Below, one piece after another: positions 3,993-32,587 of a DNA stretch of 64,000 nt. The notes under the pieces were generated by a model. The model had not been told where the DNA came from. It searched no databases and saw only the letters and a list, made by a program, of their open reading frames with translations. The stretch covers positions 182,902 through 246,901 of the IMG/VR virus record IMGVR_UViG_3300046542_000248; one strand, 5' to 3'. The first letter of the stretch is position 1, and every line of letters begins with the position of its first letter. Position numbers and translations under genes: made by a program.

Positions 3993-4038
3993 AATTTAAA
4001 ATTTTTTCTACGTTCCACGAGTCGAAAGTCGTATAAAA

Positions 4039-14824: not shown

Positions 14825-17800
14825 ATGGCTGACAGTGGCTTATTATTACCAAAACCAGTATTAACCTTGCCAGAGGGTAAGGACAATGTGCTAATTACCA
14901 ACGTGCAATATATGAAGTCGCGTAAGTTAGATAACGGCTCATACTCTGATGATAAATTGTACGTAGTCTACAGAGACTTCGATACAAATAAGAAGAACCT
15001 GCAAATTATCAGTAATCCAACTACAAACTATTATACTACTAAACCTGAATATCGAGATGATTTTAAAACTCAAAGGGAGTTTATGAATCTCGATCAGGTT
15101 GAGATGCAAGAAAGTCTCTATAAGAATATCCATCGAGATTTATTCAATATGCTTAAAAAAGATCAACGATCCCAAGAAGATCGGGATGTGAAGATGGTAA
15201 TTGAACGTGCTCAAGAACTTGGCAGATGGAGTGCGATCAAAGAATCAAACAAATGGAGACATGCTTATTTCTCAGATACCGATATATTAGATTACTCGTA
15301 TATTACTGCAAATCTTCACTACAAACCACAGGAGACAATCTTAACTAAGTCCTATTTTGATATAGAGACTGATATCTTGGGTCGTTCGAGATTTGATATA
15401 GACAGAGGTCGTGCACCTATTTGGGCAATGACCATGATCTATGACTATGATATCAATCTTAATAAAAAATGTAAGCCAAAGGTATTTACCTTCTTACTTA
15501 GAGATCACAAAAGATATCCACAGCAAAAGAAATTTGAAGAGCAGATGGATAAATTCATTGATCGAGTTCATGAAGAATGTGATCACAAGTATGGGGTTGC
15601 AGATTATCATGTAATGATATTCGACGATGAAGCTGAAATGCTCTACAAAATGTTCCAAATTCAGCATTTAATGAAACCTGACTTCACGGGTATCTGGAAC
15701 ATGCCGTTTGACCTTTTAACCCTACACAAGAAAGCTCAATACTTAGGAATCCCTCCTGAGATTCTATTCTCACATCCAGACTTTAAAGAAGCTTGGTGTC
15801 ATTACCATCTTGATGAGAGATACAAGAATGACTTCAAGAATCGTGGGGATAATTTTAACTGCTTATCTTATACAAAATATACAGACCAAATGATGGGTTA
15901 TGCCGCTAGACGTAAAGGTGGTAAAGACTACGGTTCAAATGGTTTGGATAACATTGCAAAGATTGAATTAAAAGAAGGAAAGCGTAAATGGGATAGATCT
16001 TCGACAAATACAATCAATTCACCAATCGAAGAGTATTTCAATGCTGTACTCTACAATATTACAGACGTTTGGCTCTTAGCTGGTATTGAAAGAAAGACTG
16101 GAGATATTGATGACCAGTTTTACAAAGGCTATGATGCTGGAACAAGATTTGATAAGGCTAATAGACAAACTGTAGCTTTGAAAAACTTATGGTCCTTGGG
16201 TTACTTTGAACAAGGATACGTAATGGGTAATAATATTAATGCTGATTATATCTCTGAATACGGTGCTCAACAAGCTGAAGTTGTCATTGATGAGGATGAT
16301 GAAGAGAAGCTTAAAGGTGCATTGGTAGGTAATCCGTTGAATCTTAATAGAACTGGTGAGAAGATATTCGGTGATAAACGATCCGATCGTCTATTCTCAG
16401 AACTACTTGATTTGGATGCCGCTGCAATGTATCCTAATAACAAACTGAAGAATAATATTGCAAGATCTACTCAATATGGTAGATTGATTATCCGAGGTAA
16501 AGTATCACATCTTGAGTACGGCTTAACTCCTGCACTTAGGGGTGGGGAGTTTGTCGATGATTATGAGACTCAAGACTGGATTAAACTCGGTGTTAAATGG
16601 TTCAAGCTCAAGAATATTGAGAAGTACTTTAATGAGTTCGAGGATTGGTCGAAGAAAGATCGAACTCTCATTTACTTTAAAGGTAAAAATACTGATGTCT
16701 TCTTCGATCTATGGTCTGAAAAGATGCTCAGCATTTTCTCAATCATGTATCCTAATAAGAAAAAGAATCTCATTAAGTCATATCTAAAATATGTCTATAA
16801 TAGAGATGTCAAAGATGCAAAAGCTACAATCTATAATAACTATGATGATATAGAGTATCAAACATCATTGCTTTCTGTAATTGATTGGATAGCTGAAGTT
16901 CGTCCAATCCTTACTGAATCTGGTACATTCTTTAAACGTCATGATGAAACTGGGTTAATCCCTGGTCTAATCATCCTTGACAATCTGCTTAAACAACGTA
17001 AGAAACTTAAAAGAATGGCTCTGAACTACAAACAAGCTGGTGAAATGGATCTGTTTAGATTGTTTGATCTTAGACAGAATCGTAAGAAAATCTTTGCGAA
17101 CTCAGAATATGGAGTTAGTGGAGCACCATCAGCATTTAACTACAATTATCATGTGGCACAGTCTGTAACAAGTAAAGGTCAGACTCTTATCAGTAATGCA
17201 ATGACCTTATTTGAAGATTTACTCACAGATACTCTTCAGTTCTATGATATGAACGAATTGTTCCACTATTGTGATAATATCATAACTGAAGCCTCGAAAT
17301 ATCAGGATGCTATAATTCTGAATGCAAATAAAACTGTTAAGGAAGTATTGAAACGTCTGAAGAAGAAATGTGATAACATTGAGAAGTTCAATGAGGATAT
17401 GGTTGAGCGCTATTTAGGGAATGTTTCTCAAGAAGGACTCAACAAAATCTTCTACAAGAATAACATCAATCAATTCCTTTCTGAAAGTGATTATGTACAA
17501 AAGCTTCTGCGTAAATTTGTGAGACAAACGTCTACATTTATGAACCCAGAGCATCCTCCTAAACGTACAGCAGGTATTCTGAAAGAGTTTACAAATATCG
17601 TTCTAGAATACTGTCACTACAATTATCACTACTATGGACGGATTGACAGACTGATTAACAGTCCTCGAAACTCTGTACCTATTATTGATACTGATTCAAA
17701 TATTATCACTGTTAAAGATCTCTTAGATCATATTAAGACATTTGTGTCTGAAGATTCTAACAGAATTAAGATCGTAAGAAAAGATAGTGAAGAACGAGTA

Positions 17801-18646
17801 ACTGAAAGCAATAAGCTTAAGCTTATCAATATCATTGCTACAGTTCTTACTGAAGCTATCTCAAGATCTCTTCAGAAGTTTGAAGAGATTACGAATACTA
17901 CTAATACACCACTTGGAACTTATGCATTTAAGAATGAATTCTACTTCACATCACTACTGGTTGGTGAGGGTAAGAAGAGATATCTTTCTAACTACAAACT
18001 CCAAGAAGGTAAGTATTTCCCTAATGGTATTACAGACGTTAAAGGTTTTGATTTCTTGAAGATCTCCGCTGCTCCAGAAAGACTGCGGAAAGAGATTGAA
18101 TCAATTATCTTTAAACATATTGTATCTGATAAGGTAAACATTCAAAAAGCTCTTAAGAAGTTCCTTAAACTTGAGGACTCAATCAGAGCTAGTCTGTTAG
18201 AAGGAGATAAAGAACTCTTAAATATCTCTAAGGTTAATACAATGGATGCTTATGCTGATCCATTTAGTATTGGTCAATTTAAAGCAGCGTACATCTGGAA
18301 TACAATCTATCCAGATAAGGAAATTCAATTCCCTGCTGTAGTTAATTTGATCAAAGTTGATATTGCATCTGCTAAAGATATTGCTGTATTGGCTATCGAG
18401 GATAAAGAATACTTTGATATCCTAGTAGATCTGTTAAAGACACATGAGATGAGAACTGGAATTACACAAATTGCAGTACCACTCGATCAAGAAGTGCCAG
18501 AATGGTTGTTAAAGATAATGGATGTTGAAACTATGGTTCAGAAGTATATGAATCTAGTTGAACCTATTCTTGACTGTCTGGGTATTAAATCTGTATACAA
18601 AACATCCACGGGTCGATACATCTCAAATATCGTAGACGTAGGATAA
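14825..18646 (+). CDS. family B DNA polymerase, phiKZ-like, single polypeptide
   Basis: ExoI YFDIETD, ExoII NMPFD, ExoIII YNITD; motif A DLDAAAMYP, motif B KIFANSEYG, motif C DTDS. Confidence 0.93.
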   Translation: MADSGLLLPKPVLTLPEGKDNVLITNVQYMKSRKLDNGSYSDDKLYVVYRDFDTNKKNLQIISNPTTNYYTTKPEYRDDFKTQREFMNLDQVEMQESLYKNIHRDLFNMLKKDQRSQEDRDVKMVIERAQELGRWSAIKESNKWRHAYFSDTDILDYSYITANLHYKPQETILTKSYFDIETDILGRSRFDIDRGRAPIWAMTMIYDYDINLNKKCKPKVFTFLLRDHKRYPQQKKFEEQMDKFIDRVHEECDHKYGVADYHVMIFDDEAEMLYKMFQIQHLMKPDFTGIWNMPFDLLTLHKKAQYLGIPPEILFSHPDFKEAWCHYHLDERYKNDFKNRGDNFNCLSYTKYTDQMMGYAARRKGGKDYGSNGLDNIAKIELKEGKRKWDRSSTNTINSPIEEYFNAVLYNITDVWLLAGIERKTGDIDDQFYKGYDAGTRFDKANRQTVALKNLWSLGYFEQGYVMGNNINADYISEYGAQQAEVVIDEDDEEKLKGALVGNPLNLNRTGEKIFGDKRSDRLFSELLDLDAAAMYPNNKLKNNIARSTQYGRLIIRGKVSHLEYGLTPALRGGEFVDDYETQDWIKLGVKWFKLKNIEKYFNEFEDWSKKDRTLIYFKGKNTDVFFDLWSEKMLSIFSIMYPNKKKNLIKSYLKYVYNRDVKDAKATIYNNYDDIEYQTSLLSVIDWIAEVRPILTESGTFFKRHDETGLIPGLIILDNLLKQRKKLKRMALNYKQAGEMDLFRLFDLRQNRKKIFANSEYGVSGAPSAFNYNYHVAQSVTSKGQTLISNAMTLFEDLLTDTLQFYDMNELFHYCDNIITEASKYQDAIILNANKTVKEVLKRLKKKCDNIEKFNEDMVERYLGNVSQEGLNKIFYKNNINQFLSESDYVQKLLRKFVRQTSTFMNPEHPPKRTAGILKEFTNIVLEYCHYNYHYYGRIDRLINSPRNSVPIIDTDSNIITVKDLLDHIKTFVSEDSNRIKIVRKDSEERVTESNKLKLINIIATVLTEAISRSLQKFEEITNTTNTPLGTYAFKNEFYFTSLLVGEGKKRYLSNYKLQEGKYFPNGITDVKGFDFLKISAAPERLRKEIESIIFKHIVSDKVNIQKALKKFLKLEDSIRASLLEGDKELLNISKVNTMDAYADPFSIGQFKAAYIWNTIYPDKEIQFPAVVNLIKVDIASAKDIAVLAIEDKEYFDILVDLLKTHEMRTGITQIAVPLDQEVPEWLLKIMDVETMVQKYMNLVEPILDCLGIKSVYKTSTGRYISNIVDVG

Positions 18647-23465: not shown

Positions 23466-24229
23466 TGGCTGATCTTTCTATTAATCAGTATGTATCAAAT
23501 CCTTTAGGTAAAGGATCTTCTGCTAGTTCTCTAAAGATTATTAAAACTGAATATGATGCTAGGTATGACGCACTCTTAGATATGTATGATGAATTTCAAA
23601 CTCATATTTATAGAAATAAGAATGCATACTACATCCATCTATTAATCCCTTCTGAAACTACTAAAGACTTATCTTATGACGTTGTACTTAAGATTGATAG
23701 AGCGTCTGCTACTAAAGAATCCAATTATATCAATTGGGCTATGAAAGCAATTAGTAACTCCCCTGCATTTGCATTTACCTTTGCTAATACCTTTAAACGG
23801 AATGGAACTTTGATTGAGGAACTTAAATCAATCATTCCTTCTCAGACTGTAAAAGAATTTGCAGAGATTCGTAACCCTCATAAGCTTCCAGGTGTAGATA
23901 AATCTATTTACTATGCTTGTAAGTATATCAAAGAGAGTTACTCTAATATTGATGAGATTGATAAATTTGCATCTGATCTTGACCTGAAGAAGCTTATCAA
24001 AGAGCTTAGAGACTTCAGTGAGATCATGAAAGCCAAAGATATTGATCAAAAGAAAAAGGCTGAAGAAAAGAAAGAACAAAAAGCTCAGGAGAAAAAGGAG
24101 CTTAATGAAAAACTACACAATAGGGAACATGTTATAGGAAAAATTACTACAAAATCTAATTCGAAAACATCAATCAAGGCAGCCACAGCTAAGAAGGCTT
24201 CCAAGGCAAAAAAAGCAAAACGTATATGA
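23465..24229 (+). CDS. hypothetical protein, Lys-rich tail
   Basis: 254 aa; YDVVL and SNSPAFAFTF motifs; between chaperonin and sigma-like gene. Confidence 0.75.
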   Translation: MADLSINQYVSNPLGKGSSASSLKIIKTEYDARYDALLDMYDEFQTHIYRNKNAYYIHLLIPSETTKDLSYDVVLKIDRASATKESNYINWAMKAISNSPAFAFTFANTFKRNGTLIEELKSIIPSQTVKEFAEIRNPHKLPGVDKSIYYACKYIKESYSNIDEIDKFASDLDLKKLIKELRDFSEIMKAKDIDQKKKAEEKKEQKAQEKKELNEKLHNREHVIGKITTKSNSKTSIKAATAKKASKAKKAKRI

Positions 24230-24243
24230 TATCTATTTCAAAA

Positions 24244-24270
24244 AAGAGAACTGAAGGGAGCAGTTCTCTT
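24244..24270 (+). terminator. intrinsic terminator-like hairpin
   Basis: aagagaactg/cagttctctt. Confidence 0.6.
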
Positions 24271-24286
24271 AAAATTTTCTACGAAA

Positions 24287-24296
24287 TATATATTAT
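24287..24296 (+). promoter_or_regulatory. putative early promoter driving the sigma-like subunit
   Basis: exact TATATATTAT. Confidence 0.7.
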
Positions 24297-24343
24297 TATA
24301 TTAGTCATCTATTATCTATTAGAGGGGAAAGTGAACGGGGAAG

Positions 24344-25858
24344 ATGAGAGCTGATGTCTGTAAACCAAATAGGTATCTAACCGAACAAACTAAACTATTC
24401 AGACTGGGAAAGAAGGACACATTCATTTGTGACTTCGAGAAAATGTTTCCCAATATCGAGAAAAAAGGCTTAAACATCTTTTACATCCCTCGTCCTGCAT
24501 TCTATAAGAAGGGAGATTTAATCTGCGATACAATCAATGTATTTATGAACTATTACGATCCAGATCGTGAGTTAATTACCTGCTATATCAATATGAAGGT
24601 TATGACCGACCTGAGTAATCTAACGTATACGTTCAAAAGCTTCATCAACGATATTGTGAACAAGGTATTCAGCAAATCAATGGTGAAGAAAGTTCGAGGC
24701 TTCGTAGAAGAACAATATCGAGTTGACCTTGAAATCTCTACAGACAAAGATGAGAAATACAAGGAAAACCCGTATCAATTTACGAACAAACATGGAAAGG
24801 TATTGATGGCGATCAGTACTGCTATCAAAATTATCATTCCAATTATCTCCCATTACTATTCAGTACGAAAAGACATGGTAGAAGATATGATCATGAAGAA
24901 ATTCTTGTATCACTGCTTCTATGCCTTATTCCCTATCTTCGAGAAAGATGAAGAGGATAGAGATAAGGATATGAATATCTATAACAAGCTTTACGCTACA
25001 GTGGACAAGATTATCGAAAACTCGACTCACACTGATAGTGGTATGTGGAAACGTAATAAGAACAAAGGTATTACGCCTTCCTCAGAAAAGACTCGGATTA
25101 CCAAAATGGTTATCCAAGATCTTCTGTACAAATATGAATTTGATAAGATCCTTATTAACTTGAATTATGTAGGTATCAGAGGTGCTCTGAAATTTACAAT
25201 TGAAGGTAAGGATACTCATGATTATTCAGATATCAATACCAAGCGTTCCGATAGTAAGATGTCCGGTCTGGAACAATTGGAAATGAACGCTGCGAGAATT
25301 GATGAGCGAGATATTATTATCTCAAGTGCGGGTAGTAAGCATAAGATCGAAAAACTTGTAAAGCAATATAAGATTGAGATCAAAGACGAGGACATGAAGT
25401 TCTATGAGAATAATCTTCAGATGTCGTCCACTCAAACTAATATGGTCTTGCAATTCTTTGCTGATGACTTTAAAGGCTTAGAGAATATGAAACTCATTAC
25501 TAGGCAAGACTTCTTTAGACTGATTATCATCTTGAAGGAAGAGTTATATAGAAGAGGATTCCGTGTGGTTCCAAATCTTATTACTGGTCGTCCTTCTAAT
25601 CGTATCAAGGGAAGAAAGATTGGAACCAAGAAATTGGCGAAGATCAAAGCATTCCCACGCTACTATAACTTGATGAAGCAATACAAAGATGTAACTTCAA
25701 GTATCAATGAAGACATCATCATCAAGTACATCGGTACGTTTATCAACAACCCTCTTACATACGTAGATCACCAAAACAAGGCTCTACTTGGAGAGGACAT
25801 CGAGATTAACGAAAATATGATCATTGATGAGACTATCCGTCTGATCGAAATGTTCTAA
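24344..25858 (+). CDS. non-virion RNAP promoter-specificity subunit (AR9 gp226/phiKZ gp68-like)
   Basis: size, position near the chaperonin as in AR9 (g226/g228), and recalled similarity (DFEKMF, YxxxDxI, SxLEQLEMN..RxD); needs HHpred confirmation. Confidence 0.72.
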   Translation: MRADVCKPNRYLTEQTKLFRLGKKDTFICDFEKMFPNIEKKGLNIFYIPRPAFYKKGDLICDTINVFMNYYDPDRELITCYINMKVMTDLSNLTYTFKSFINDIVNKVFSKSMVKKVRGFVEEQYRVDLEISTDKDEKYKENPYQFTNKHGKVLMAISTAIKIIIPIISHYYSVRKDMVEDMIMKKFLYHCFYALFPIFEKDEEDRDKDMNIYNKLYATVDKIIENSTHTDSGMWKRNKNKGITPSSEKTRITKMVIQDLLYKYEFDKILINLNYVGIRGALKFTIEGKDTHDYSDINTKRSDSKMSGLEQLEMNAARIDERDIIISSAGSKHKIEKLVKQYKIEIKDEDMKFYENNLQMSSTQTNMVLQFFADDFKGLENMKLITRQDFFRLIIILKEELYRRGFRVVPNLITGRPSNRIKGRKIGTKKLAKIKAFPRYYNLMKQYKDVTSSINEDIIIKYIGTFINNPLTYVDHQNKALLGEDIEINENMIIDETIRLIEMF

Positions 25859-25867
25859 CAATAACTG

Positions 25868-25900
25868 GAGATAGACTCGTATAGGGTCTATCTCTTATTA
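25868..25900 (+). terminator. intrinsic terminator
   Basis: gagatagac/gtctatctc-ttatta. Confidence 0.7.
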
Positions 25901-25927
25901 CTTTAAAAATATTAGGAGGAATAAGAA

Positions 25928-26761
25928 ATGTCCAATAAAATGTATATGGTTCCAGTAATGCCTAAAATTGCTGATACAAGAGTAACTCGTCAAATGCGTC
26001 ATTATATGGAGCATGCCACTGTAGATTTCACTATAACTGACCATTTCAATGAAATTTATGTTACGCTTAATTTAAAAGTGTTATATCATAAAAGTTTTCT
26101 AGAGTACTTTCGTAGTTGGATTGACGCTGATGCTGAATTTGATAACGTTCCGCATAAATATTCATCAGAAAAAGATATTACATGTGAGGTACTAACTGGT
26201 AATTTTCATGAGGATGGTAGTATTAGCGAATTAACAAATTATGTAAACTTACGAGCAGGTCATGTTCGTAGAGAAGGTGAATATTTAATAATCTCATTTA
26301 GAGGTCAAATTAAACCATTAGGTTCTAATGAAATTAAATACTTTACTGAAACTTGGCAAGAGCATTTACAATCTATAAAGGAATATATGAGTGATGTATC
26401 AACTCCTCCAAAAGCTGCTAATAATACTGTAGATTTCATGGAAAAATTAAATGAAAAAGAAGCAAAGCTTCATATGTATAAAGCTCAGATGCATTCTCAA
26501 TTATATATGGGTATAGTATTATCAATATTAGCAATTATTGATGAGAAATATTTATTACCTGAGAATGTTTCTATGCATAAGTTAAGTAAATGCTTTAATC
26601 AGGCCACTGATGAATTGCTGGCTGATGAGGAATTTATAAATACATATGGTCTGGATAAAGACTATACTCCATCAGAGCAGTTATTAATAATCAATCGTAC
26701 TGTAGATAGAGTTATCGAGTTATTTCTCGGTGATGAGTTTCAGCCTGAAAAAATTAAGTAA
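25928..26761 (+). CDS. hypothetical protein
   Basis: 277 aa; SD aggagg. Confidence 0.7.
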   Translation: MSNKMYMVPVMPKIADTRVTRQMRHYMEHATVDFTITDHFNEIYVTLNLKVLYHKSFLEYFRSWIDADAEFDNVPHKYSSEKDITCEVLTGNFHEDGSISELTNYVNLRAGHVRREGEYLIISFRGQIKPLGSNEIKYFTETWQEHLQSIKEYMSDVSTPPKAANNTVDFMEKLNEKEAKLHMYKAQMHSQLYMGIVLSILAIIDEKYLLPENVSMHKLSKCFNQATDELLADEEFINTYGLDKDYTPSEQLLIINRTVDRVIELFLGDEFQPEKIK

Positions 26762-26811
26762 TATTCTCTTGGTGACAAGAGATTATATATGAATTATTAG
26801 GAGGAAAGTCT

Positions 26812-27663
26812 ATGACATATCCAAATGAAGTTATTGCTGTATCTAATATGTATCCTATATCAGTAGAACTTAATAACGCCGTTAGATCGTCTATTGAAAA
26901 AGGTGCATCTATTACATTAGGTCCACCTGTTGATAGATCTTCTAAGATGTTAGTATATTTAACAGTGACTGAAGGGATAGACGCTTGTAAACAATATTTT
27001 GAGCAGCTATCGGAAGTTATCGAATCACATAAGAAAAATAAGCCAGGATTACAATTGATTGCTGGTGTTGATGTTATATGTGCAAAGAGGGATGAGTCCA
27101 ATAATAGCAGCTTTTGGGGAGCATCCGGTACCAGTTTTGGTTTATATGCATATACCCAACTAACTTTACTCAGTGTCATGCACAGAGAAGGTAGTACGGT
27201 TTTTGCGTTAACAGGATATTTAAAAAATATCAATGATATTGAGATTAATTATTTGGAGAAATTATTAGAAGCATATAATAAATCCAAACCAGATTTTTCA
27301 ACTAAGGTTACAATAAAACTTGAAGGTGTTGAGCTTTATGCATATCAAAAGCAAGTTGATAATCAACTTCACATAACTTTAACTACCGAAAAGAAAGCTC
27401 TAACATCCGCTCTTGATAGTAGTTTTGTAATGAATATGACTGAAGGTACATCTTTAACCTATGCATTAAATTCTGCTGCAATTCCTGATAAAATTAAACA
27501 GGCGATGGAAACTTTGAAAGAAACCAGAGATAATCTGGATTCAATGCAGGTTGGTCAGCTTCTTAATTATGTCGAAAATGTTAAGAGAGATTTATCAAGC
27601 GCTTACGATAGTTTAGATAATCTCTATTGGAGTGCTTTTTACCATATGAAGAAAGAAGGTTAA
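26812..27663 (+). CDS. hypothetical protein
   Basis: 283 aa; SD aggagg. Confidence 0.7.
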   Translation: MTYPNEVIAVSNMYPISVELNNAVRSSIEKGASITLGPPVDRSSKMLVYLTVTEGIDACKQYFEQLSEVIESHKKNKPGLQLIAGVDVICAKRDESNNSSFWGASGTSFGLYAYTQLTLLSVMHREGSTVFALTGYLKNINDIEINYLEKLLEAYNKSKPDFSTKVTIKLEGVELYAYQKQVDNQLHITLTTEKKALTSALDSSFVMNMTEGTSLTYALNSAAIPDKIKQAMETLKETRDNLDSMQVGQLLNYVENVKRDLSSAYDSLDNLYWSAFYHMKKEG

Positions 27664-27666
27664 ACA

Positions 27667-27948
27667 ATGTATTTAATTCACACTCTGAAAGTTAGTGTAG
27701 AGATCGAAGCATTTAAAAAGATCTCTGAAATTGATACACTTAAAGCTAAAGATTATCGAGTTCTGTTTCATCTGATGACGCATCTAGATGGTAGGACTGC
27801 AAAATCTATCAGTCCAAAGAAAATCGCCGAACAACTTGGACTTGATAAAGATGATGTTAAAAAGTCTTTGGTAAAATTAATCGGTGTTGAATTACTGATT
27901 ATGGAGTCTAATGAACACGTCAAAGATGGTTATAAATTCACATTTTAA
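27667..27948 (+). CDS. winged-helix DNA-binding protein
   Basis: DYRVLFHLM...SISPKKIAEQLGLDKDDVKKSLVKL. Confidence 0.75.
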   Translation: MYLIHTLKVSVEIEAFKKISEIDTLKAKDYRVLFHLMTHLDGRTAKSISPKKIAEQLGLDKDDVKKSLVKLIGVELLIMESNEHVKDGYKFTF

Positions 27949-27968
27949 CCCTTGGGAGGGGCGAACAA

Positions 27969-28289
27969 ATGAGACAACTTATTTATCAAGATCAGTGGAA
28001 ATTAACATCACGTGTATTGAGTACTATGCATTTCATATTTACAAGAAATGAAGATGGTACTGTAGTATACAATAAAAATGCTGGAAGCAATGGTAATCAA
28101 ACCAATATTTATAAGACCACTAAATCTAATGAAGAAATTGCTGCTGAAGTTGGAGAGGTTATTAACAACTTTAAAACTAAAATTGCCAGTAGCAGTCCGT
28201 TTATTAGATTCGTCCGTGCTTTTATTCATGGTACAAAATTGGATAAAGAAATTGAAAAGATATTCGATGAAGACATTACTGAATATTAA
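27969..28289 (+). CDS. hypothetical protein
   Basis: SD ggagggg. Confidence 0.65.
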   Translation: MRQLIYQDQWKLTSRVLSTMHFIFTRNEDGTVVYNKNAGSNGNQTNIYKTTKSNEEIAAEVGEVINNFKTKIASSSPFIRFVRAFIHGTKLDKEIEKIFDEDITEY

Positions 28290-28299
28290 AGGAGGATAT

Positions 28300-28662
28300 A
28301 TGAGCGATCTTCAAAAGGATATTGATAAATGGAAAAAAATAACTGAGCTGCAAGAAACATCGGGTGATCGTGTTACATGTCCAGAATGCAAAGATCAAGT
28401 TGCATTTTGTGATTGCCCTCAACGATTAGCTCAAGAAATATTAACAAAATTAGTTGAAGATGATATGATTATTACTGAGGATAAGTCTGATACCAAACCG
28501 GTAGAAAATCCTCTTAATCGGTTTGTGGATAAAACTTCTACTTTGGATGAAGAAAGTGGAATTACTACAAATCATTATAAATATCGTTCTATACTCAATC
28601 CCAAGGTTCAACCTGGCGACAGGATTACAATAAGCATTAACAATTCGAAAGGGGATAATTAA
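28300..28662 (+). CDS. hypothetical protein with Cys cluster
   Basis: CPECKDQVAFCDCP; start moved to the ATG after aaggagg. Confidence 0.65.
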   Translation: MSDLQKDIDKWKKITELQETSGDRVTCPECKDQVAFCDCPQRLAQEILTKLVEDDMIITEDKSDTKPVENPLNRFVDKTSTLDEESGITTNHYKYRSILNPKVQPGDRITISINNSKGDN

Positions 28663-28663
28663 A

Positions 28664-29020
28664 ATGGCTGGTAAACAAGTGAAGATTCGTGCAAAGAAAG
28701 ACGGTATTCTTTCGAAGAAGCTGATTAAGAAAATTAACGGTGGTCACGAGGACGATACCAAAAAGAAGAAAAAGAAAAAGAAGAAAACGTCTGAGTGGAA
28801 GCCGCACAAGAAGTTCAAAAAGAAAATTGTGCACATTGAGACTAAGAAAGGCAAGGATAAAAAGAAGAAAAAGAAAGAGCATAAAGCTCCTATCAATTTC
28901 AAGAGTTCCAAGAAGTCATCTTCGAATACATCGGACGGTGCAAGAATCTTCCAGCTCTTGAAGAAAGATATGGATATTAAACTTGAACTTACTAAGCTGC
29001 TTCAAAAGATTTTAAAGTAG
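28664..29020 (+). CDS. extremely Lys-rich basic protein, putative nucleic-acid binding
   Basis: long poly-K runs, 118 aa. Confidence 0.65.
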   Translation: MAGKQVKIRAKKDGILSKKLIKKINGGHEDDTKKKKKKKKKTSEWKPHKKFKKKIVHIETKKGKDKKKKKKEHKAPINFKSSKKSSSNTSDGARIFQLLKKDMDIKLELTKLLQKILK

Positions 29021-29045
29021 TCTGATTAATTTTCAATTATAAGTA

Positions 29046-29057
29046 AACACTTATGTG
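29046..29057 (+). promoter_or_regulatory. putative late promoter AACA-N6-TG
   Basis: AACA cttatg TG, followed by inverted repeat tgtggatat/atatccaca (29054-29082). Confidence 0.5.
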
Positions 29058-29113
29058 GATATGACTGTGGGTTATATCCACAAAAACTAACCAGCCTTAA
29101 GGAGGCAAACAAA

Positions 29114-29893
29114 ATGAACAATGTACAATCTTGGGTACCAACGAAAGAAATGAAAGTAGTAAGCTTTAAAAATGATGTAATCGTATTTCCGTTTGAACAA
29201 GCAGGATTTCCACTAACAAATCCACACTTCAAAAACGAACGTCAAAATTACAAAAAGAATTTTGACCAAATTACACATTTCATTAATTATTTTATGAATG
29301 TGTACGATGTTGCAAGTCACGTAATTGATACGTATAACTTGCATAAGATCGTCGTTGATTCTAGTCTAGCACCGCGTTTGGAATATTTCGTAAATAACTT
29401 CTATACTGATCTATTCACACAAGAAGTTATTGACAAAATTAAACAAATGGTGAAAGATAATCTGGATCATGAAAACGTTTCTAACCATGTGTATTATGAA
29501 GCTATAAAAACCGAAGATTTGCTAATTATGTCTATCGCAACCAGATTAGTTCTACCAATGATAACTCATTATGATATCATGGAGCACAATGGTTCGGGCA
29601 GAAATATATACATCTATATCAAAGAATTATTTAAACGATTTGGTTTTAATGCACTTAATACCGAACTATCTCTAATGTGTATAGATAGAGTTCGGACCAA
29701 CTATACTGATAACAGGATACTTTGGGTTCAACAAAATTATCCTCTTACGCAGATTGCTCTTAATTTATTCGAAAAAGCTATCGTCACAAATGCATTGTAT
29801 AAATTCGATTTTGATAAGAATCCATTATCATTTATGGAAATTATTATCTCGCAATCGTTACTATTTGTGACGGCATCAAAGCAACCAGAATAA
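29114..29893 (+). CDS. truncated paralog of the gp226-like sigma subunit (N-terminal domain only)
   Basis: collinear motifs shared with 24344..25858 (FE..F; YKK..D.I...IN.FMN.YD; S.A....P.I.HY; LYK..FDK). Confidence 0.75.
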   Translation: MNNVQSWVPTKEMKVVSFKNDVIVFPFEQAGFPLTNPHFKNERQNYKKNFDQITHFINYFMNVYDVASHVIDTYNLHKIVVDSSLAPRLEYFVNNFYTDLFTQEVIDKIKQMVKDNLDHENVSNHVYYEAIKTEDLLIMSIATRLVLPMITHYDIMEHNGSGRNIYIYIKELFKRFGFNALNTELSLMCIDRVRTNYTDNRILWVQQNYPLTQIALNLFEKAIVTNALYKFDFDKNPLSFMEIIISQSLLFVTASKQPE

Positions 29894-29902
29894 ACCAACA
29901 AG

Positions 29903-29942
29903 ACCTACCACTGTAACAAGTGGTAGGTTAATTTATTTTTTA
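29903..29942 (+). terminator. intrinsic terminator
   Basis: acctaccact/agtggtaggt plus T-rich tail. Confidence 0.75.
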
Positions 29943-29955
29943 AGGAGAGATAGAA

Positions 29956-30714
29956 ATGTCGAAATATATACAAATAATCCCCAATCATTTTGGGATAAAG
30001 ATGTTAGAAAATGTTGCTCGTGGAAGTGGTAAGTCTGTAACTCTTCCATCTGACGGGCTTGAATATGAATTACTCAAAGCATACGTTGCAAACTTTCCAA
30101 AGAAGAAGGAAGGTAATCTTCCTAAGAAATTTCAACATGCTGGTTCAGATACATTTGTTATCCATGCTGAGACTAATGAAAATAAACCTGTTAGAACACT
30201 GGGACCTCAAGATCCTAATGAGGTATATAGATTCTTTGGAAGAATCAAAAGAAAGAAGCTCAATCAAATCATTACTAAACATCCTTATGCCAAGGTTTTA
30301 GTTGATCTTGGAAATGGGCTTAATAAGAGGGTTCCTATTAGAATCTTTAAGAAGTTATTACAGATTAAGTTCATTATCTTTGAACGAGACTACGAGTTCT
30401 GTTCACCTGATGAACATGAGTCTGAGTCGATGAATGTTGTCTGGGAAGCACCTCCTGAGATCATAAAGGAGTATATCTACTCTATCAACCAACTACTTTA
30501 CGTTCTTACTGTAGAGAGTTCTTATGATAAAGCAGTAGAAAACTTCCTGCTATCCAAATTCTTCTTATTGGTAGGACAAGAGAAAACTCTAAAGATCATG
30601 TATCAAAATGGTAAGTGTGAGAAGATGAAACTTGATGCGTTCTTAACTGAATATGGAATTAACGTTGATGTAAACTTCAATCGTATTTGGGATAAACAAG
30701 GAAGGTGGTCATAA
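29956..30714 (+). CDS. hypothetical protein
   Basis: 252 aa; SD taaggag. Confidence 0.7.
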   Translation: MSKYIQIIPNHFGIKMLENVARGSGKSVTLPSDGLEYELLKAYVANFPKKKEGNLPKKFQHAGSDTFVIHAETNENKPVRTLGPQDPNEVYRFFGRIKRKKLNQIITKHPYAKVLVDLGNGLNKRVPIRIFKKLLQIKFIIFERDYEFCSPDEHESESMNVVWEAPPEIIKEYIYSINQLLYVLTVESSYDKAVENFLLSKFFLLVGQEKTLKIMYQNGKCEKMKLDAFLTEYGINVDVNFNRIWDKQGRWS

Positions 30715-30715
30715 T

Positions 30716-31027
30716 ATGACTATGAATATGAGAGCAGTGGGACACGGAATGCCATCTTATGCAGCAATAGCTGGTTTGTTAGCAGGTTCACATTTTAAAG
30801 GTGAAACTGAACATCCTTCTAAATCAAATCCACCATCCTCAGCAATTCAAAAAGAATTTAGAGCAAAGATGCAAGCAAAGAGAGAAGAAGATCGTAGATG
30901 TTTTCTAATCCGTAAAGGTGTTTGTCCATCTTGCCAAGGTAAATTAACCCGTGGTAAGAAGGATAAACAGATGGAATATAAACGTCAATGGGTCTGTACT
31001 CCTTGTGATAAAATTCATTATATCTAA
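30716..31027 (+). CDS. zinc-ribbon protein
   Basis: CPSC...CTPC. Confidence 0.7.
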   Translation: MTMNMRAVGHGMPSYAAIAGLLAGSHFKGETEHPSKSNPPSSAIQKEFRAKMQAKREEDRRCFLIRKGVCPSCQGKLTRGKKDKQMEYKRQWVCTPCDKIHYI

Positions 31028-31235: not shown

Positions 31236-32273
31236 TTAGACATTTGAATCGCTCCTTTTTAATAAAAGTTCTTTATTGATTTTATCTTGATCATGATTAA
31301 GCATTCGACATTGATCATCATACCATTGCTGATCTTTACCGAGTTCAAAGAAATTATACTCAATATAAACAAAGTTATTAACAGATTCTTTATTAAGTAT
31401 TTCTCTAAGAGTATCTAAATCCATCATATAATAACTATCTTCCCATTGTAAAGCACCATTAATTACATGATCTACATGAAGAGATGAATTATCATCTGTA
31501 ATGAATGAAGAAATCATAATAGAACGAATCTTATTAGAATTATACCTGGCTGACATTGCATTAGCCCTATAGAAAGCTGGGATAGAAGCAGAGAATAGAG
31601 GCTCAAAGAATTTGACACTATCAGCAAGATGATAGTATTGCACATTCATAAACAATTCTCTACCGTACCAATCTGCCTTCTGAATACTTGTAGGAATTGG
31701 TATTGTCATAACACCCGTATTTAAACGAGTATTCTTAATTTGTCTAGCTCTTTCAACCATTTTATGCGTTGTATTGAAATAGTCTGGAAGATTGTGAAGA
31801 ATTTCACCAATACGATTAAATACAGCAGCATTGTTTTCTGTATCAGGGTTAATAACTCCTACATTGCTACCATTTTCTCCGAATAGGAATAGATATGCTA
31901 GTAGTTGTCCATAAGTCAATTCCCTATGATGCTGTCTTGGAAGTCGTACAACGTGATTAAGATTATTAAACGCAGTGTACAGAATTGCAAAAGTTCCTTT
32001 ATTGATAGGAAAATGTTCTGTTGGAGTTGCACCGCCGCCCATAGTTTCAATACGAGCAACTTCTCTGAAATAATACCAGGGATTGGTTGTACATTCCAAG
32101 ATAATCTTTTGCTTCTGTACAGATGTGAGGTTTGGATCATATGGATCTACATCTTGTAAATCATTATTATGCAGATGTAACATATGCGGAACTGTTAAAC
32201 CGTGTTCCTTAAATAATTTGTACAGAGCAAGGAATGAAATGTTCTTAGTATTGTGATGATACCAATAACTCAT
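31236..32273 (-). CDS. degenerate terminase-large-subunit ATPase paralog (no nuclease domain)
   Basis: TKNISFL...VDPYDP...EC..NPWYYFREVARI, typical of jumbo-phage TerL N termini; PRQHHRELT in place of PRQxGKT; 345 aa only. Confidence 0.7.
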   Translation of the reverse strand: MSYWYHHNTKNISFLALYKLFKEHGLTVPHMLHLHNNDLQDVDPYDPNLTSVQKQKIILECTTNPWYYFREVARIETMGGGATPTEHFPINKGTFAILYTAFNNLNHVVRLPRQHHRELTYGQLLAYLFLFGENGSNVGVINPDTENNAAVFNRIGEILHNLPDYFNTTHKMVERARQIKNTRLNTGVMTIPIPTSIQKADWYGRELFMNVQYYHLADSVKFFEPLFSASIPAFYRANAMSARYNSNKIRSIMISSFITDDNSSLHVDHVINGALQWEDSYYMMDLDTLREILNKESVNNFVYIEYNFFELGKDQQWYDDQCRMLNHDQDKINKELLLKRSDSNV

Positions 32274-32557
32274 TCTGCTTCCACCTTTACATTGAAATTT
32301 TTCATTTCTTCTGCAATGATTTCATTAGCTCGTTGATCACGATGGAAGATGGTTTTAATATAATCCGCTACTTGACCTCTGTTCCTAGAAAGAGAGTTTG
32401 TAGTAGCGACAGCTCTAGAAAGCTTTTCAATATTAATAGAACCATCTTCATTTTGGAAAGTGACCGCTTTAGTAGGATTCTCTAAAAGTTGTCTAACCTT
32501 CTTTTGAATCAAGTGCTTTCTTTCAGTAGTCAAATCTTTGGTCGCTGTTTTTAACAT
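32270..32557 (-). CDS. hypothetical protein
   Basis: 95 aa; SD aggagg; overlaps the start of the TerL paralog by 4 nt. Confidence 0.65.
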   Translation of the reverse strand: MLKTATKDLTTERKHLIQKKVRQLLENPTKAVTFQNEDGSINIEKLSRAVATTNSLSRNRGQVADYIKTIFHRDQRANEIIAEEMKNFNVKVEAE

Positions 32558-32577
32558 TTGTGTAGCCTCCTATAAAA

Positions 32578-32587
32578 TATATATTAT
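32578..32587 (+). promoter_or_regulatory. putative early promoter TATATATTAT
   Basis: exact motif upstream of primase. Confidence 0.55.

What the first reader, a model, noticed from the sequence alone, without database searches (positions are those of the whole stretch)
29046..29893. Second, N-domain-only copy of the phage sigma-like subunit under a late-type promoter
The 259-aa protein aligns collinearly with the first half of the 504-aa gp226-like subunit: FICDFEKMF/IVFPFEQAGF; RPAFYKKGDLICDTINVFMNYYD/RQNYKKNFDQITHFINYFMNVYD; LMAISTAIKIIIPIISHY/LIMSIATRLVLPMITHY; LLYKYEFDK/ALYKFDFDK. It stops roughly where, from recall of the AR9 gp226 structure, the sigma2-like N-domain ends. The full-length gene has an early promoter, while the short copy sits behind AACA-N6-TG. 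Inference: a phage-encoded alternative or dominant-negative specificity factor that reprograms or shuts off nvRNAP. I know of only one such subunit in AR9 and phiKZ.
Basis: partly seen in the sequence, partly recalled or inferred. Interest (0 to 1): 0.87.

Follow-up and report, generated by a model that had tools for sequence, protein, structure and literature searches.

The report
Stand-alone N-domain copy of phage sigma-like factor
An AR9-like giant phage carries its normal 504-residue promoter-recognition subunit and also a separate 259-residue gene for that subunit's N-terminal DNA-reading domain alone; this short form belongs to a fast-evolving, apparently undescribed family found in other uncultured giant phages and probably modulates the phage's own RNA polymerase, which is untested.

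Summary
[quoted passage not shown] An AlphaFold model (pLDDT 92.6) matches only AR9 gp226 in the PDB (TM 0.77-0.78). The protein ends at the gp226 N-domain boundary (AR9 residue ~264), so it has no sigma finger and no C-terminal core-anchoring domain.

It is not a split gene, a fragment or a recent duplicate. At least 10 further complete ~240-280-aa N-domain-only genes exist in distant metagenomic phages. One contig carries three in tandem, and three lineages have the gene next to the nvRNAP beta'-C gene. Six of the nine short proteins form a supported clade.

The family evolves much faster than neighbouring polymerase genes and is patchily distributed. It is absent from AR9 and from GenBank phages.

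The late-type AACA-N6-TG motif is real and plausible, but it is not conserved upstream of the other family members.

My best reading is a trans-acting competitor or modulator of nvRNAP promoter engagement, not a complete specificity factor. That function is inferred, not shown. I rate it a new variant of a known kind, of moderate to high interest.

The parts
29046..29057 (+). AACA-N6-TG, an AR9-type late (nvRNAP) promoter-like motif. The predicted +1 is G29057, 57 nt before the ATG.
   Evidence: The motif class is depleted in the window (52 against 107 +/- 10). 17 of 52 matches lie in the 6.8% of the window that is intergenic, and 12-13 are correctly oriented 12-112 nt upstream of ORF starts. 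Those ORFs include orthologues of AR9 virion proteins g165, g213 and g214. The consensus comes from PMC7598289 and PMC9209446. Function is not shown. The chance of one match in this 93-nt spacer is about 0.04-0.08 (my estimate).
29055..29081 (+). Inverted repeat GTGGATAT-N11-ATATCCAC at the predicted 5' end of the transcript.
   Evidence: Read directly from the sequence. Its role (5' stem-loop?) is not tested.
29099..29105 (+). Ribosome-binding site AAGGAGG, 8 nt before the ATG.
   Evidence: read directly.
29114..29893 (+). CDS of 259 aa: a stand-alone gp226 N-terminal domain that includes the sigma2-like part. It has no sigma finger and no C-terminal domain.
   Evidence: AF2 pLDDT 92.6, pTM 0.91; 7s01_A and 7um0_A, TM 0.77-0.78, probability 1.0.
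29902..29940 (+). Intrinsic-terminator-like hairpin (11 bp stem) followed by a T-run. It separates the short gene from the next ORF.
24284..24296 (+). Exact AR9-type early (vRNAP) promoter 13-mer AAATATATATTAT in front of the full-length paralogue.
   Evidence: (annotated AR9 early promoters).
24344..25858 (+). Full-length gp226 orthologue (504 aa), the nvRNAP promoter-specificity subunit. It is the paralogue in the same genome.
   Evidence: GroEL - X - gp226 - primase synteny with AR9 g228-g225.
25867..25895 (+). Terminator-like hairpin after the full-length gene. It marks the start of the variable island (about 25.9-32.6 kb) that holds the short gene.
   Evidence: In AR9, g226 and the primase gene g225 are adjacent. 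Relatives L001-L003 carry different genes here.

Best explanation
The 259-aa protein is an independently folded copy of the N-terminal promoter-recognition domain of the phage's sigma-like nvRNAP subunit (equivalent to AR9 gp226 residues 1-264). It is made from its own gene, with its own ribosome-binding site and terminator.

It lacks the sigma-finger linker, which completes the template-strand promoter pocket. It also lacks the C-terminal domain, which tethers gp226 to the core and binds upstream DNA. So it cannot be a complete specificity subunit.

The most likely action is in trans, as a mimic of the full-length factor's mobile N-domain. It would occupy the non-template-strand AA(N)A element of AACA promoters, or the N-domain docking site on the polymerase claw, or both. 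That would damp or retune nvRNAP initiation, either by the phage's own enzyme (late negative feedback if the AACA promoter is used) or by a co-infecting relative's enzyme.

Shown here: homology, fold, domain boundary, family membership, fast evolution and patchy distribution. Inferred: DNA or core binding, competition, and timing of expression.
For: Identity:
- establish the homology and the fold.
- The protein ends at the N-domain boundary. The CTD profile finds no partner ORF.

Known gp226 mechanism (PMC9209446):
- The N-domain is a stable, trypsin-resistant unit and is mobile in the free holoenzyme.
- On its own surface it first captures the non-template AA(N)A motif.
- The C-terminal domain provides the anchoring, and the finger plus the beta' lid complete the pocket.

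Conservation pattern:
- The short family keeps constraint on the helix carrying S245/Y246, the non-template-strand groove (score 1.49 against 1.41 in full-length proteins). It also keeps the fold-core motifs NYFxxxYD and P148.
- It has lost constraint on the 2.1bis helix that forms the -10U pocket with the core (0.06 against 1.64).
- It shares a 4-residue deletion just after that helix.

Accessory, conflict-like behaviour:
- The short gene is 39% identical where the adjacent beta'-C gene is 80.5% identical.
- One contig has a tandem triplication.
- It is absent from AR9 and from close relatives of this phage.
- It lies in a variable island.
- In three lineages it is linked to the nvRNAP beta'-C gene.
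Against: - There is no binding, expression or activity data.
- Without the C-terminal anchor, affinity for the core may be too low to compete.
- The window's own copy keeps a full-length-like 2.1bis motif (NRILW, with Ile at the position of AR9 V206). This copy may therefore still form a promoter pocket.
- Promoter class differs among family members, so 'late feedback' cannot be general.
- The conservation contrast comes from alignments at 20-25% identity, and the two groups are unequal in size (9 against 23).
Confidence: 0.4

Rival explanations
1. It is a minimal alternative specificity factor that works like T4 gp55, a sigma2-only late sigma that needs separate partners. In this reading the N-domain-only protein binds the nvRNAP core, possibly with an unidentified partner replacing the C-terminal domain. 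It would direct initiation from a different promoter class or a different DNA state, for example single-stranded or forked DNA.
For: - It retains the whole sigma2-like part (AR9 184-264) and, in this copy, a 2.1bis-like NRILW motif.
- AR9 holoenzyme can initiate on ssDNA and fork templates without the non-template groove (PMC9209446).
- An alternative nvRNAP form has been postulated for phiKZ middle promoters (PMC7598289).
- The short gene is linked to the beta'-C gene in three lineages.
- The T4 gp55/gp33 precedent is from my own knowledge; gp33 is mentioned in PMC7824862.
Against: - There is no sigma finger, which in AR9 forms part of the promoter pocket.
- The 2.1bis helix is unconstrained across the family.
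- Evolution is very fast and distribution is patchy, which is unusual for a factor reading a conserved promoter.
- A crude k-mer scan of the window's intergenic regions found only the early-type motif and AT-rich words; no third motif stood out, and the gapped AACA-N6-TR motif is not a pattern this 8-mer scan could register.
Confidence: 0.2
2. It is a conflict decoy. Either the free N-domain copy titrates a host immune sensor or inhibitor that targets the essential sigma-like subunit, or it is a weapon against the nvRNAP of competing related phages. It would not regulate the phage's own programme.
For: - It evolves fast relative to its neighbours.
- It occurs as a tandem triplication.
- Its presence is patchy.
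- Its genomic positions are variable.
- In L005 it lies 25 nt downstream of an Apyc1-like anti-Pycsar gene.
- Protein-sensing defences against jumbo phages exist (Avs5/JADA, PMC12931631).
Against: - No known defence senses gp226 or gp68.
- The Apyc1 adjacency is seen in one locus only.
- JADA itself did not appear among the Foldseek PDB matches; whether its structure is in that PDB copy was not checked.
- The idea is purely circumstantial.
Confidence: 0.2
3. It is a subunit or specificity factor of the virion RNA polymerase. It would be made late, packaged and injected.
For: - A late-type motif like those in front of virion-protein orthologues precedes the gene.
- No promoter-specificity factor of any jumbo-phage vRNAP is known (PMC7598289, PMC13282480).
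Against: - AR9 uses the identical early-promoter 13-mer but has no detectable short paralogue.
- Close relatives of this phage also lack it.
- The family diverges fast although the early promoter is conserved.
- The L016 copies have an early-type promoter.
- In three lineages the gene sits next to an nvRNAP gene, not a vRNAP gene.
Confidence: 0.08
4. It is a non-functional remnant of a duplicated or acquired gp226 gene.
For: It is unique among close relatives, lies in a variable island, and diverges fast.
Against: - The ORF is intact, with a strong ribosome-binding site and its own terminator.
- The fold prediction is very confident.
- The same domain boundary is kept in at least 11 genes across distant phages, with invariant core residues.
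- There is a supported short-form clade.
Confidence: 0.05

Closest known systems
AR9 gp226 (PDB 7S01, 7UM0, 7UM1), promoter-specificity subunit of the non-virion RNA polymerase
   Same: The fold matches the N-terminal domain, residues 1-264, including the sigma2-like helices 184-264. Foldseek gives TM 0.77-0.78 and the short-family profile gives E=1.8e-14. A conserved helix corresponds to the non-template-strand groove (S245/Y246 align with S/F).
   Different: It has no sigma-finger linker (265-294) and no C-terminal domain (295-464) with its core anchor and pseudo -35 binding motif. It is not under an early promoter. It evolves fast and is dispensable, being absent from AR9 itself.
The 504-aa gp226 orthologue in the same window (24344-25858)
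   Same: It is a paralogue in the same genome: 24% identity over about 260 residues, collinear.
   Different: It belongs to a different, well-supported clade (100/100), so the short gene is not a recent duplicate of it. It has Gly where AR9 has V206, whereas the short copy has Ile. It has an early promoter, whereas the short copy has a late-type motif.
phiKZ gp68 (PDB 7OGP and others)
   Same: It belongs to the same superfamily. A phiKZ-like homologue (phage Noxifer) appears weakly in the BFVD fold search. PMC9209446 reports a gp68 N-domain model that superimposes on the gp226 N-domain.
   Different: gp68 is full-length and required for assembly of the enzyme. There is no detectable sequence similarity to the short protein.
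T4 gp55 (sigma2-only late sigma) and bacterial sigma region-2 fragments (from my own knowledge)
   Same: These are sigma2-type modules without a sigma4-type domain. They show that such a module can work, or compete, on a multisubunit RNA polymerase.
   Different: There is no sequence relationship. gp55 is essential and conserved in T4-like phages and needs gp33 and the sliding clamp. No partner was found here.

Membership tests
gp226/gp68 family of jumbo-phage nvRNAP sigma-like subunits | N-terminal domain fold (AR9 residues 1-264) including the sigma2-like helices | tested here: met
   AF2 pLDDT 92.6. The only Foldseek PDB hits are 7s01_A and 7um0_A, TM 0.77-0.78. phmmer and HMM matches are.
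gp226/gp68 family of jumbo-phage nvRNAP sigma-like subunits | Sigma-finger-like linker (AR9 265-294) that enters the cleft and pairs with the beta' lid | tested here: not met
   The protein ends at the column of AR9 residue ~264. A TAA stop and then a terminator follow.
gp226/gp68 family of jumbo-phage nvRNAP sigma-like subunits | C-terminal domain (AR9 295-464): core anchor and pseudo -35 DNA-binding motif | tested here: not met
   The CTD profile hits only full-length proteins. No CTD-like ORF is found in the window apart from the 504-aa gene, and the downstream 252-aa ORF is unrelated.
gp226/gp68 family of jumbo-phage nvRNAP sigma-like subunits | 2.1bis helix with the uracil-discriminating residue (AR9 V206, I207, Y210) | tested here: inconclusive
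   This copy has N-R-I-L-W-V-Q: Ile at position 206, Trp 208 kept, Tyr 210 changed to Gln. Across the short family the helix is unconstrained, 0.06 against 1.64.
gp226/gp68 family of jumbo-phage nvRNAP sigma-like subunits | Early expression from a vRNAP promoter | tested here: not met
   No TATATATTAT-type motif lies in the 160 nt upstream, only AACA-N6-TG. Expression itself is not testable here.
gp226/gp68 family of jumbo-phage nvRNAP sigma-like subunits | Binds the nvRNAP core and confers promoter-specific initiation | not testable with these tools
   This needs reconstitution or complex modelling. The core subunit genes lie outside the window.
Bacterial sigma-70 family | Sequence match to sigma region 2 or 4 models | tested here: not met
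   Pfam scan: no sigma domain, only a sub-threshold ARM_CPL3 hit. Foldseek finds no sigma chains in the PDB.
N-domain-only gp226 paralogues (family proposed here) | A complete ORF of about 240-280 aa that is internal to its contig, covers the N-domain only and ends 8-25 residues after the FDKN...QL.Y helix | tested here: met
   There are 11 genes besides the window's: L004, L005, L006, L007/8, L009/10, L011, L016 (three copies) and L017.
N-domain-only gp226 paralogues (family proposed here) | Co-occurrence with a full-length gp226 gene in the same genome, i.e. a paralogue and not a split orthologue | tested here: inconclusive
   Shown only for the window. The other members sit on contigs of 1.5-133 kb of which at most 18 kb was readable, and no full-length gene or CTD-only ORF was seen there.

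The most novel reading that the evidence does not exclude
N-domain-only copies of the sigma-like subunit are a hitherto unrecognised class of phage-encoded transcription regulators, 'sigma-domain mimics'. AR9-like giant phages would use them either to switch off or retarget their own multisubunit RNA polymerase, or to sabotage the polymerase of competing relatives. That would explain their rapid evolution, tandem amplification and patchy spread. A still bolder variant is that some of them are the missing promoter-recognition factor of the virion RNA polymerase.
Probability: 0.3. Interest if true: 0.85.

Novelty: new variant of a known kind. Interest (0 to 1): 0.62.

Why it matters
Giant phages of the AR9 and phiKZ type transcribe their genomes with their own multisubunit RNA polymerases. 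So far one sigma-like subunit (gp226 or gp68) is the only known specificity factor, and no regulator of these enzymes is known.

A recurrent, independently encoded copy of just the DNA-reading domain would be the first candidate for such a regulator. It comes with a simple test system. AR9 nvRNAP can be reconstituted, and its gp226 N-domain is a stable fragment. Adding an N-domain in trans would show directly whether this architecture inhibits, retargets or does nothing.

It also adds an example of domain-level paralogy of sigma-like factors outside cells.

Tried and rejected
1. Split gene with the downstream 252-aa ORF (259 + 252 is close to 504). Rejected for these reasons:
- BLASTP shows no similarity to the C-half.
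- The CTD profile gives no hit.
- The two ORFs are in different frames, with a terminator between them.
- The 252-aa gene has 39-54% identical orthologues in relatives L001-L003 that have no short gene beside them.
An AF2 model of the 252-aa protein was too poor (pLDDT 55) to use.

2. Recent duplicate of the 504-aa gene. Rejected by the tree.

3. Contig-end fragments. P0024, P0026, P0029, P0038 and P0043 are such fragments and were set aside. The others are complete internal ORFs.

4. A general vRNAP sigma. Disfavoured (see the rival explanations).

5. JADA, the conserved gene downstream of an nvRNAP subunit gene in Chimalliviridae (PMC12931631). It did not appear among the Foldseek PDB matches; whether its structure is in that PDB copy was not checked.

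6. A third promoter class in the window. None stood out in a crude intergenic k-mer scan.

7. Searches that found nothing:
- megablast of 24000-31000 against GenBank phages.
- tblastn of the short protein, P0021 and P0023 against GenBank phages.
- The word-indexed protein search, which found only the protein itself.

8. Co-occurrence of short and full-length genes on other contigs could not be shown.

Full report
**What is there.**
- The finding's interval holds one ORF, 29114-29893 (+), 259 aa.
- It has an AAGGAGG ribosome-binding site 8 nt before the ATG.
- An 11-bp hairpin plus T-run terminator follows at 29902-29940.
- The interval starts at an AACA-N6-TG motif, 29046-29057.
- The window (34% GC) contains a 504-aa ORF at 24344-25858.

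**The full-length paralogue.**
- phmmer matches the 504-aa ORF to AR9 gp226 (7s01_A) at E=6e-19 over almost its whole length.
- It also hits PHROG 25005 'RNA polymerase' at 6e-25.
- The order of neighbouring genes, GroEL - X - gp226 - primase, follows AR9 g228-g225.
- The phage has no close relative in GenBank. Metagenomic relatives on contigs of 186-258 kb share 72-91% identity in this protein.

**Is the similarity real?** Yes.
- BLASTP of the short protein against the 504-aa protein gives a single collinear alignment.
- An exhaustive phmmer scan of 1.84 billion representative proteins with the short protein returned 32 hits. All I examined are gp226-like. The best full-length hits have E=3e-20 and 7e-18, and the match always covers only their first ~280 residues.
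- AlphaFold2 with a 42-row alignment gave pLDDT 92.6 and pTM 0.91.
- In Foldseek against the PDB, only AR9 gp226 chains are significant (TM 0.77-0.78, probability 1.0); every other match has E>1.
- In BFVD the hits are again only gp226/gp68-family proteins.
- A profile made from the short proteins alone hits AR9 gp226 residues 30-260 at E=1.8e-14.

**Domain boundary.**
- PMC9209446 defines gp226 as follows: N-domain 1-264 (sigma2-like part 184-264), sigma-finger linker 265-294, C-domain 295-464.
- In the joint alignment the short protein's last residues fall on AR9 ~257-264 and then stop.
- It is therefore the complete N-domain and nothing more.
- A profile of the linker plus C-domain finds only full-length proteins. 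It does not find the downstream 252-aa ORF or any ORF near other short genes.
- The 252-aa ORF is an unrelated conserved gene whose orthologues in L001-L003 have no short gene beside them.
- So this is neither a split gene nor a frameshifted one.

**A family, not a one-off.**
- The phmmer hits fall into two length classes, about 500 aa and about 240-280 aa.
- The short ones are complete ORFs internal to their contigs: L004, L005, L006, L007/8, L009/10, L011, L016 and L017. All end 8-25 residues after the same C-terminal helix.
- L016, a 132.7-kb contig, has three in tandem, 40-44% identical to each other.
- In L004, L006 and L007/8 the short gene follows the nvRNAP beta'-C gene, the AR9 g154 orthologue (7s00_D at E=2e-53). 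AR9 has an unrelated 196-aa gene at that position.
- In a maximum-likelihood tree of the N-domain, six of the nine short proteins, including this one, form a supported clade (96/92). That clade is apart from the clade holding the window's 504-aa protein (100/100).
- A single origin of all the short forms is not excluded. The branches are long, so attraction artefacts are possible.
- The clade shares a 4-residue deletion right after the 2.1bis helix.

**Evolutionary behaviour.**
- Where the adjacent beta'-C genes are 80.5% and 57.6% identical, the short genes are 38.6% and 31% identical.
- Close relatives of the window's phage have a full-length factor 72-84% identical, yet no orthologue of the short gene appeared. 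The next-best short-form hit in the whole library is only 27% identical. Their syntenic regions also lack it.
- A six-frame HMM scan of the complete AR9 genome finds only gp226. E-values are 1e-58 and 1e-16, and the next hit is at 0.006.
- tblastn of three short proteins against 50,697 GenBank phage records finds nothing.
- In the window the gene lies in a ~6.8-kb island between the gp226 and primase orthologues. These two genes are adjacent in AR9.
- I found no mention of such paralogues in the held literature.

**Promoters.**
- The AR9 early-promoter 13-mer AAATATATATTAT, extracted from AR9's annotation, occurs exactly at 24284-24296 in front of the 504-aa gene. It also occurs at 4036, 14463 (DNA polymerase) and 32575 (primase).
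- The late consensus AACA-N6-T(A/G) (PMC7598289) occurs 52 times against 107 +/- 10 in shuffles. All 100 shuffles had at least 52.
- 17 of the 52 matches lie in the 6.8% of the window that is intergenic. Of these, 12-13 are oriented 12-112 nt before ORF starts, including orthologues of AR9 virion proteins g165, g213 and g214.
- The motif is therefore very probably a working late promoter in this phage.
- The copy at 29046 is a plausible instance, but with caveats. It ends ..TGTG where most instances end ..ATA. One chance match in this spacer has probability about 0.04-0.08 (my estimate). No terminator lies between 26782 and 29902, so read-through from upstream genes is possible.
- None of the other family members has the motif. 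The first gene of the L016 triplet has an early-type TATATATTAT 97 nt upstream.

**Clues to mechanism.**
- According to PMC9209446, the gp226 N-domain is a stable unit that is mobile in the free holoenzyme.
- It first captures the non-template AA(N)A element on its own surface, using S245 and Y246.
- The C-domain holds the factor on the core. The finger, the 2.1bis helix (V206, I207, Y210) and beta-N then form the template-strand -10U pocket.
- Column-wise conservation gives the following scores:

| Region | Short family | Full-length |
|---|---|---|
| Helix 236-256 (non-template groove) | 1.49 | 1.41 |
| 2.1bis helix | 0.06 | 1.64 |

- The short family also keeps the fold-core motifs. Besides the 2.1bis helix, it has lost constraint on the preceding sigma2.1 region.
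- This fits a protein that keeps the fold and the strand-binding face but is not selected to build the promoter pocket with the core.
- Together with the missing anchor and finger, I read it as a trans-acting mimic or competitor of the N-domain step, not a full specificity factor.
- The window's own copy does retain a full-length-like N-R-I-L-W, so an alternative-factor role for this copy cannot be excluded.
- None of this is shown experimentally.

**Verdict.**
- The feature is a new variant of a known kind: a stand-alone N-domain paralogue family of the jumbo-phage sigma-like subunit.

Noticed in passing
window, whole (list): AACA-N6-T(A/G) is two-fold depleted (52 against 107 +/- 10 in shuffles) and about five-fold enriched in intergenic DNA. 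This looks like selection against stray late promoters.
   Followed up: partly
window 25040-25042 (residue G233 of the 504-aa protein): The full-length factor and its whole clade have Gly (D-S-G-M-W) where AR9 gp226 has V206. That residue excludes thymine, and V206G makes AR9 nvRNAP accept T (PMC9209446). This raises the question whether this phage clade really has uracil DNA or needs that discrimination. The short paralogue has Ile at this position.
   Followed up: partly
L016:6899-9339: There are three tandem N-domain-only paralogues (277, 250 and 266 aa; 40-44% identical to each other). They sit behind an early-type TATATATTAT and upstream of gyrase B/A genes on a 132.7-kb contig.
   Followed up: partly
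L004:1-2347; L006:7926-10771; L007:2238-5418: The short paralogue lies directly downstream of the nvRNAP beta'-C gene (AR9 g154 orthologue). A terminator-like hairpin and a TTATATAAAT-like stretch lie between them. AR9 has an unrelated 196-aa gene there.
   Followed up: partly
L005:1124-2695: An Apyc1-like (anti-Pycsar, metallo-beta-lactamase fold) gene sits 25 nt upstream of a short paralogue on the same strand.
   Followed up: no
window 31236-32273 (-): [quoted passage not shown] The terminase may be split or interrupted, as in AR9 (g121, joined from 5 pieces).
   Followed up: no
window 14825-18646 (+): The DNA polymerase is a single 1273-aa ORF that matches both AR9 g152 and g132, which are separate genes in AR9.
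   Followed up: no
window 32553-32587: A late-type AACA-N6-TA and an exact early 13-mer lie 10 nt apart (22 nt start to start), in front of the primase orthologue. This suggests dual-class control.
   Followed up: no
window 28664-29020 (+): A 118-aa extremely lysine-rich ORF (runs of 8-10 K) lies immediately upstream of the short paralogue. It has no family match.
   Followed up: no
BFVD entry A0A8S5PNJ2 (Myoviridae sp. ctwwN25, 306 aa): This is the best structural match to the short protein (TM 0.86 and 0.73). It could be another N-domain-only member or a fragment. Its sequence was not retrievable here.
   Followed up: no
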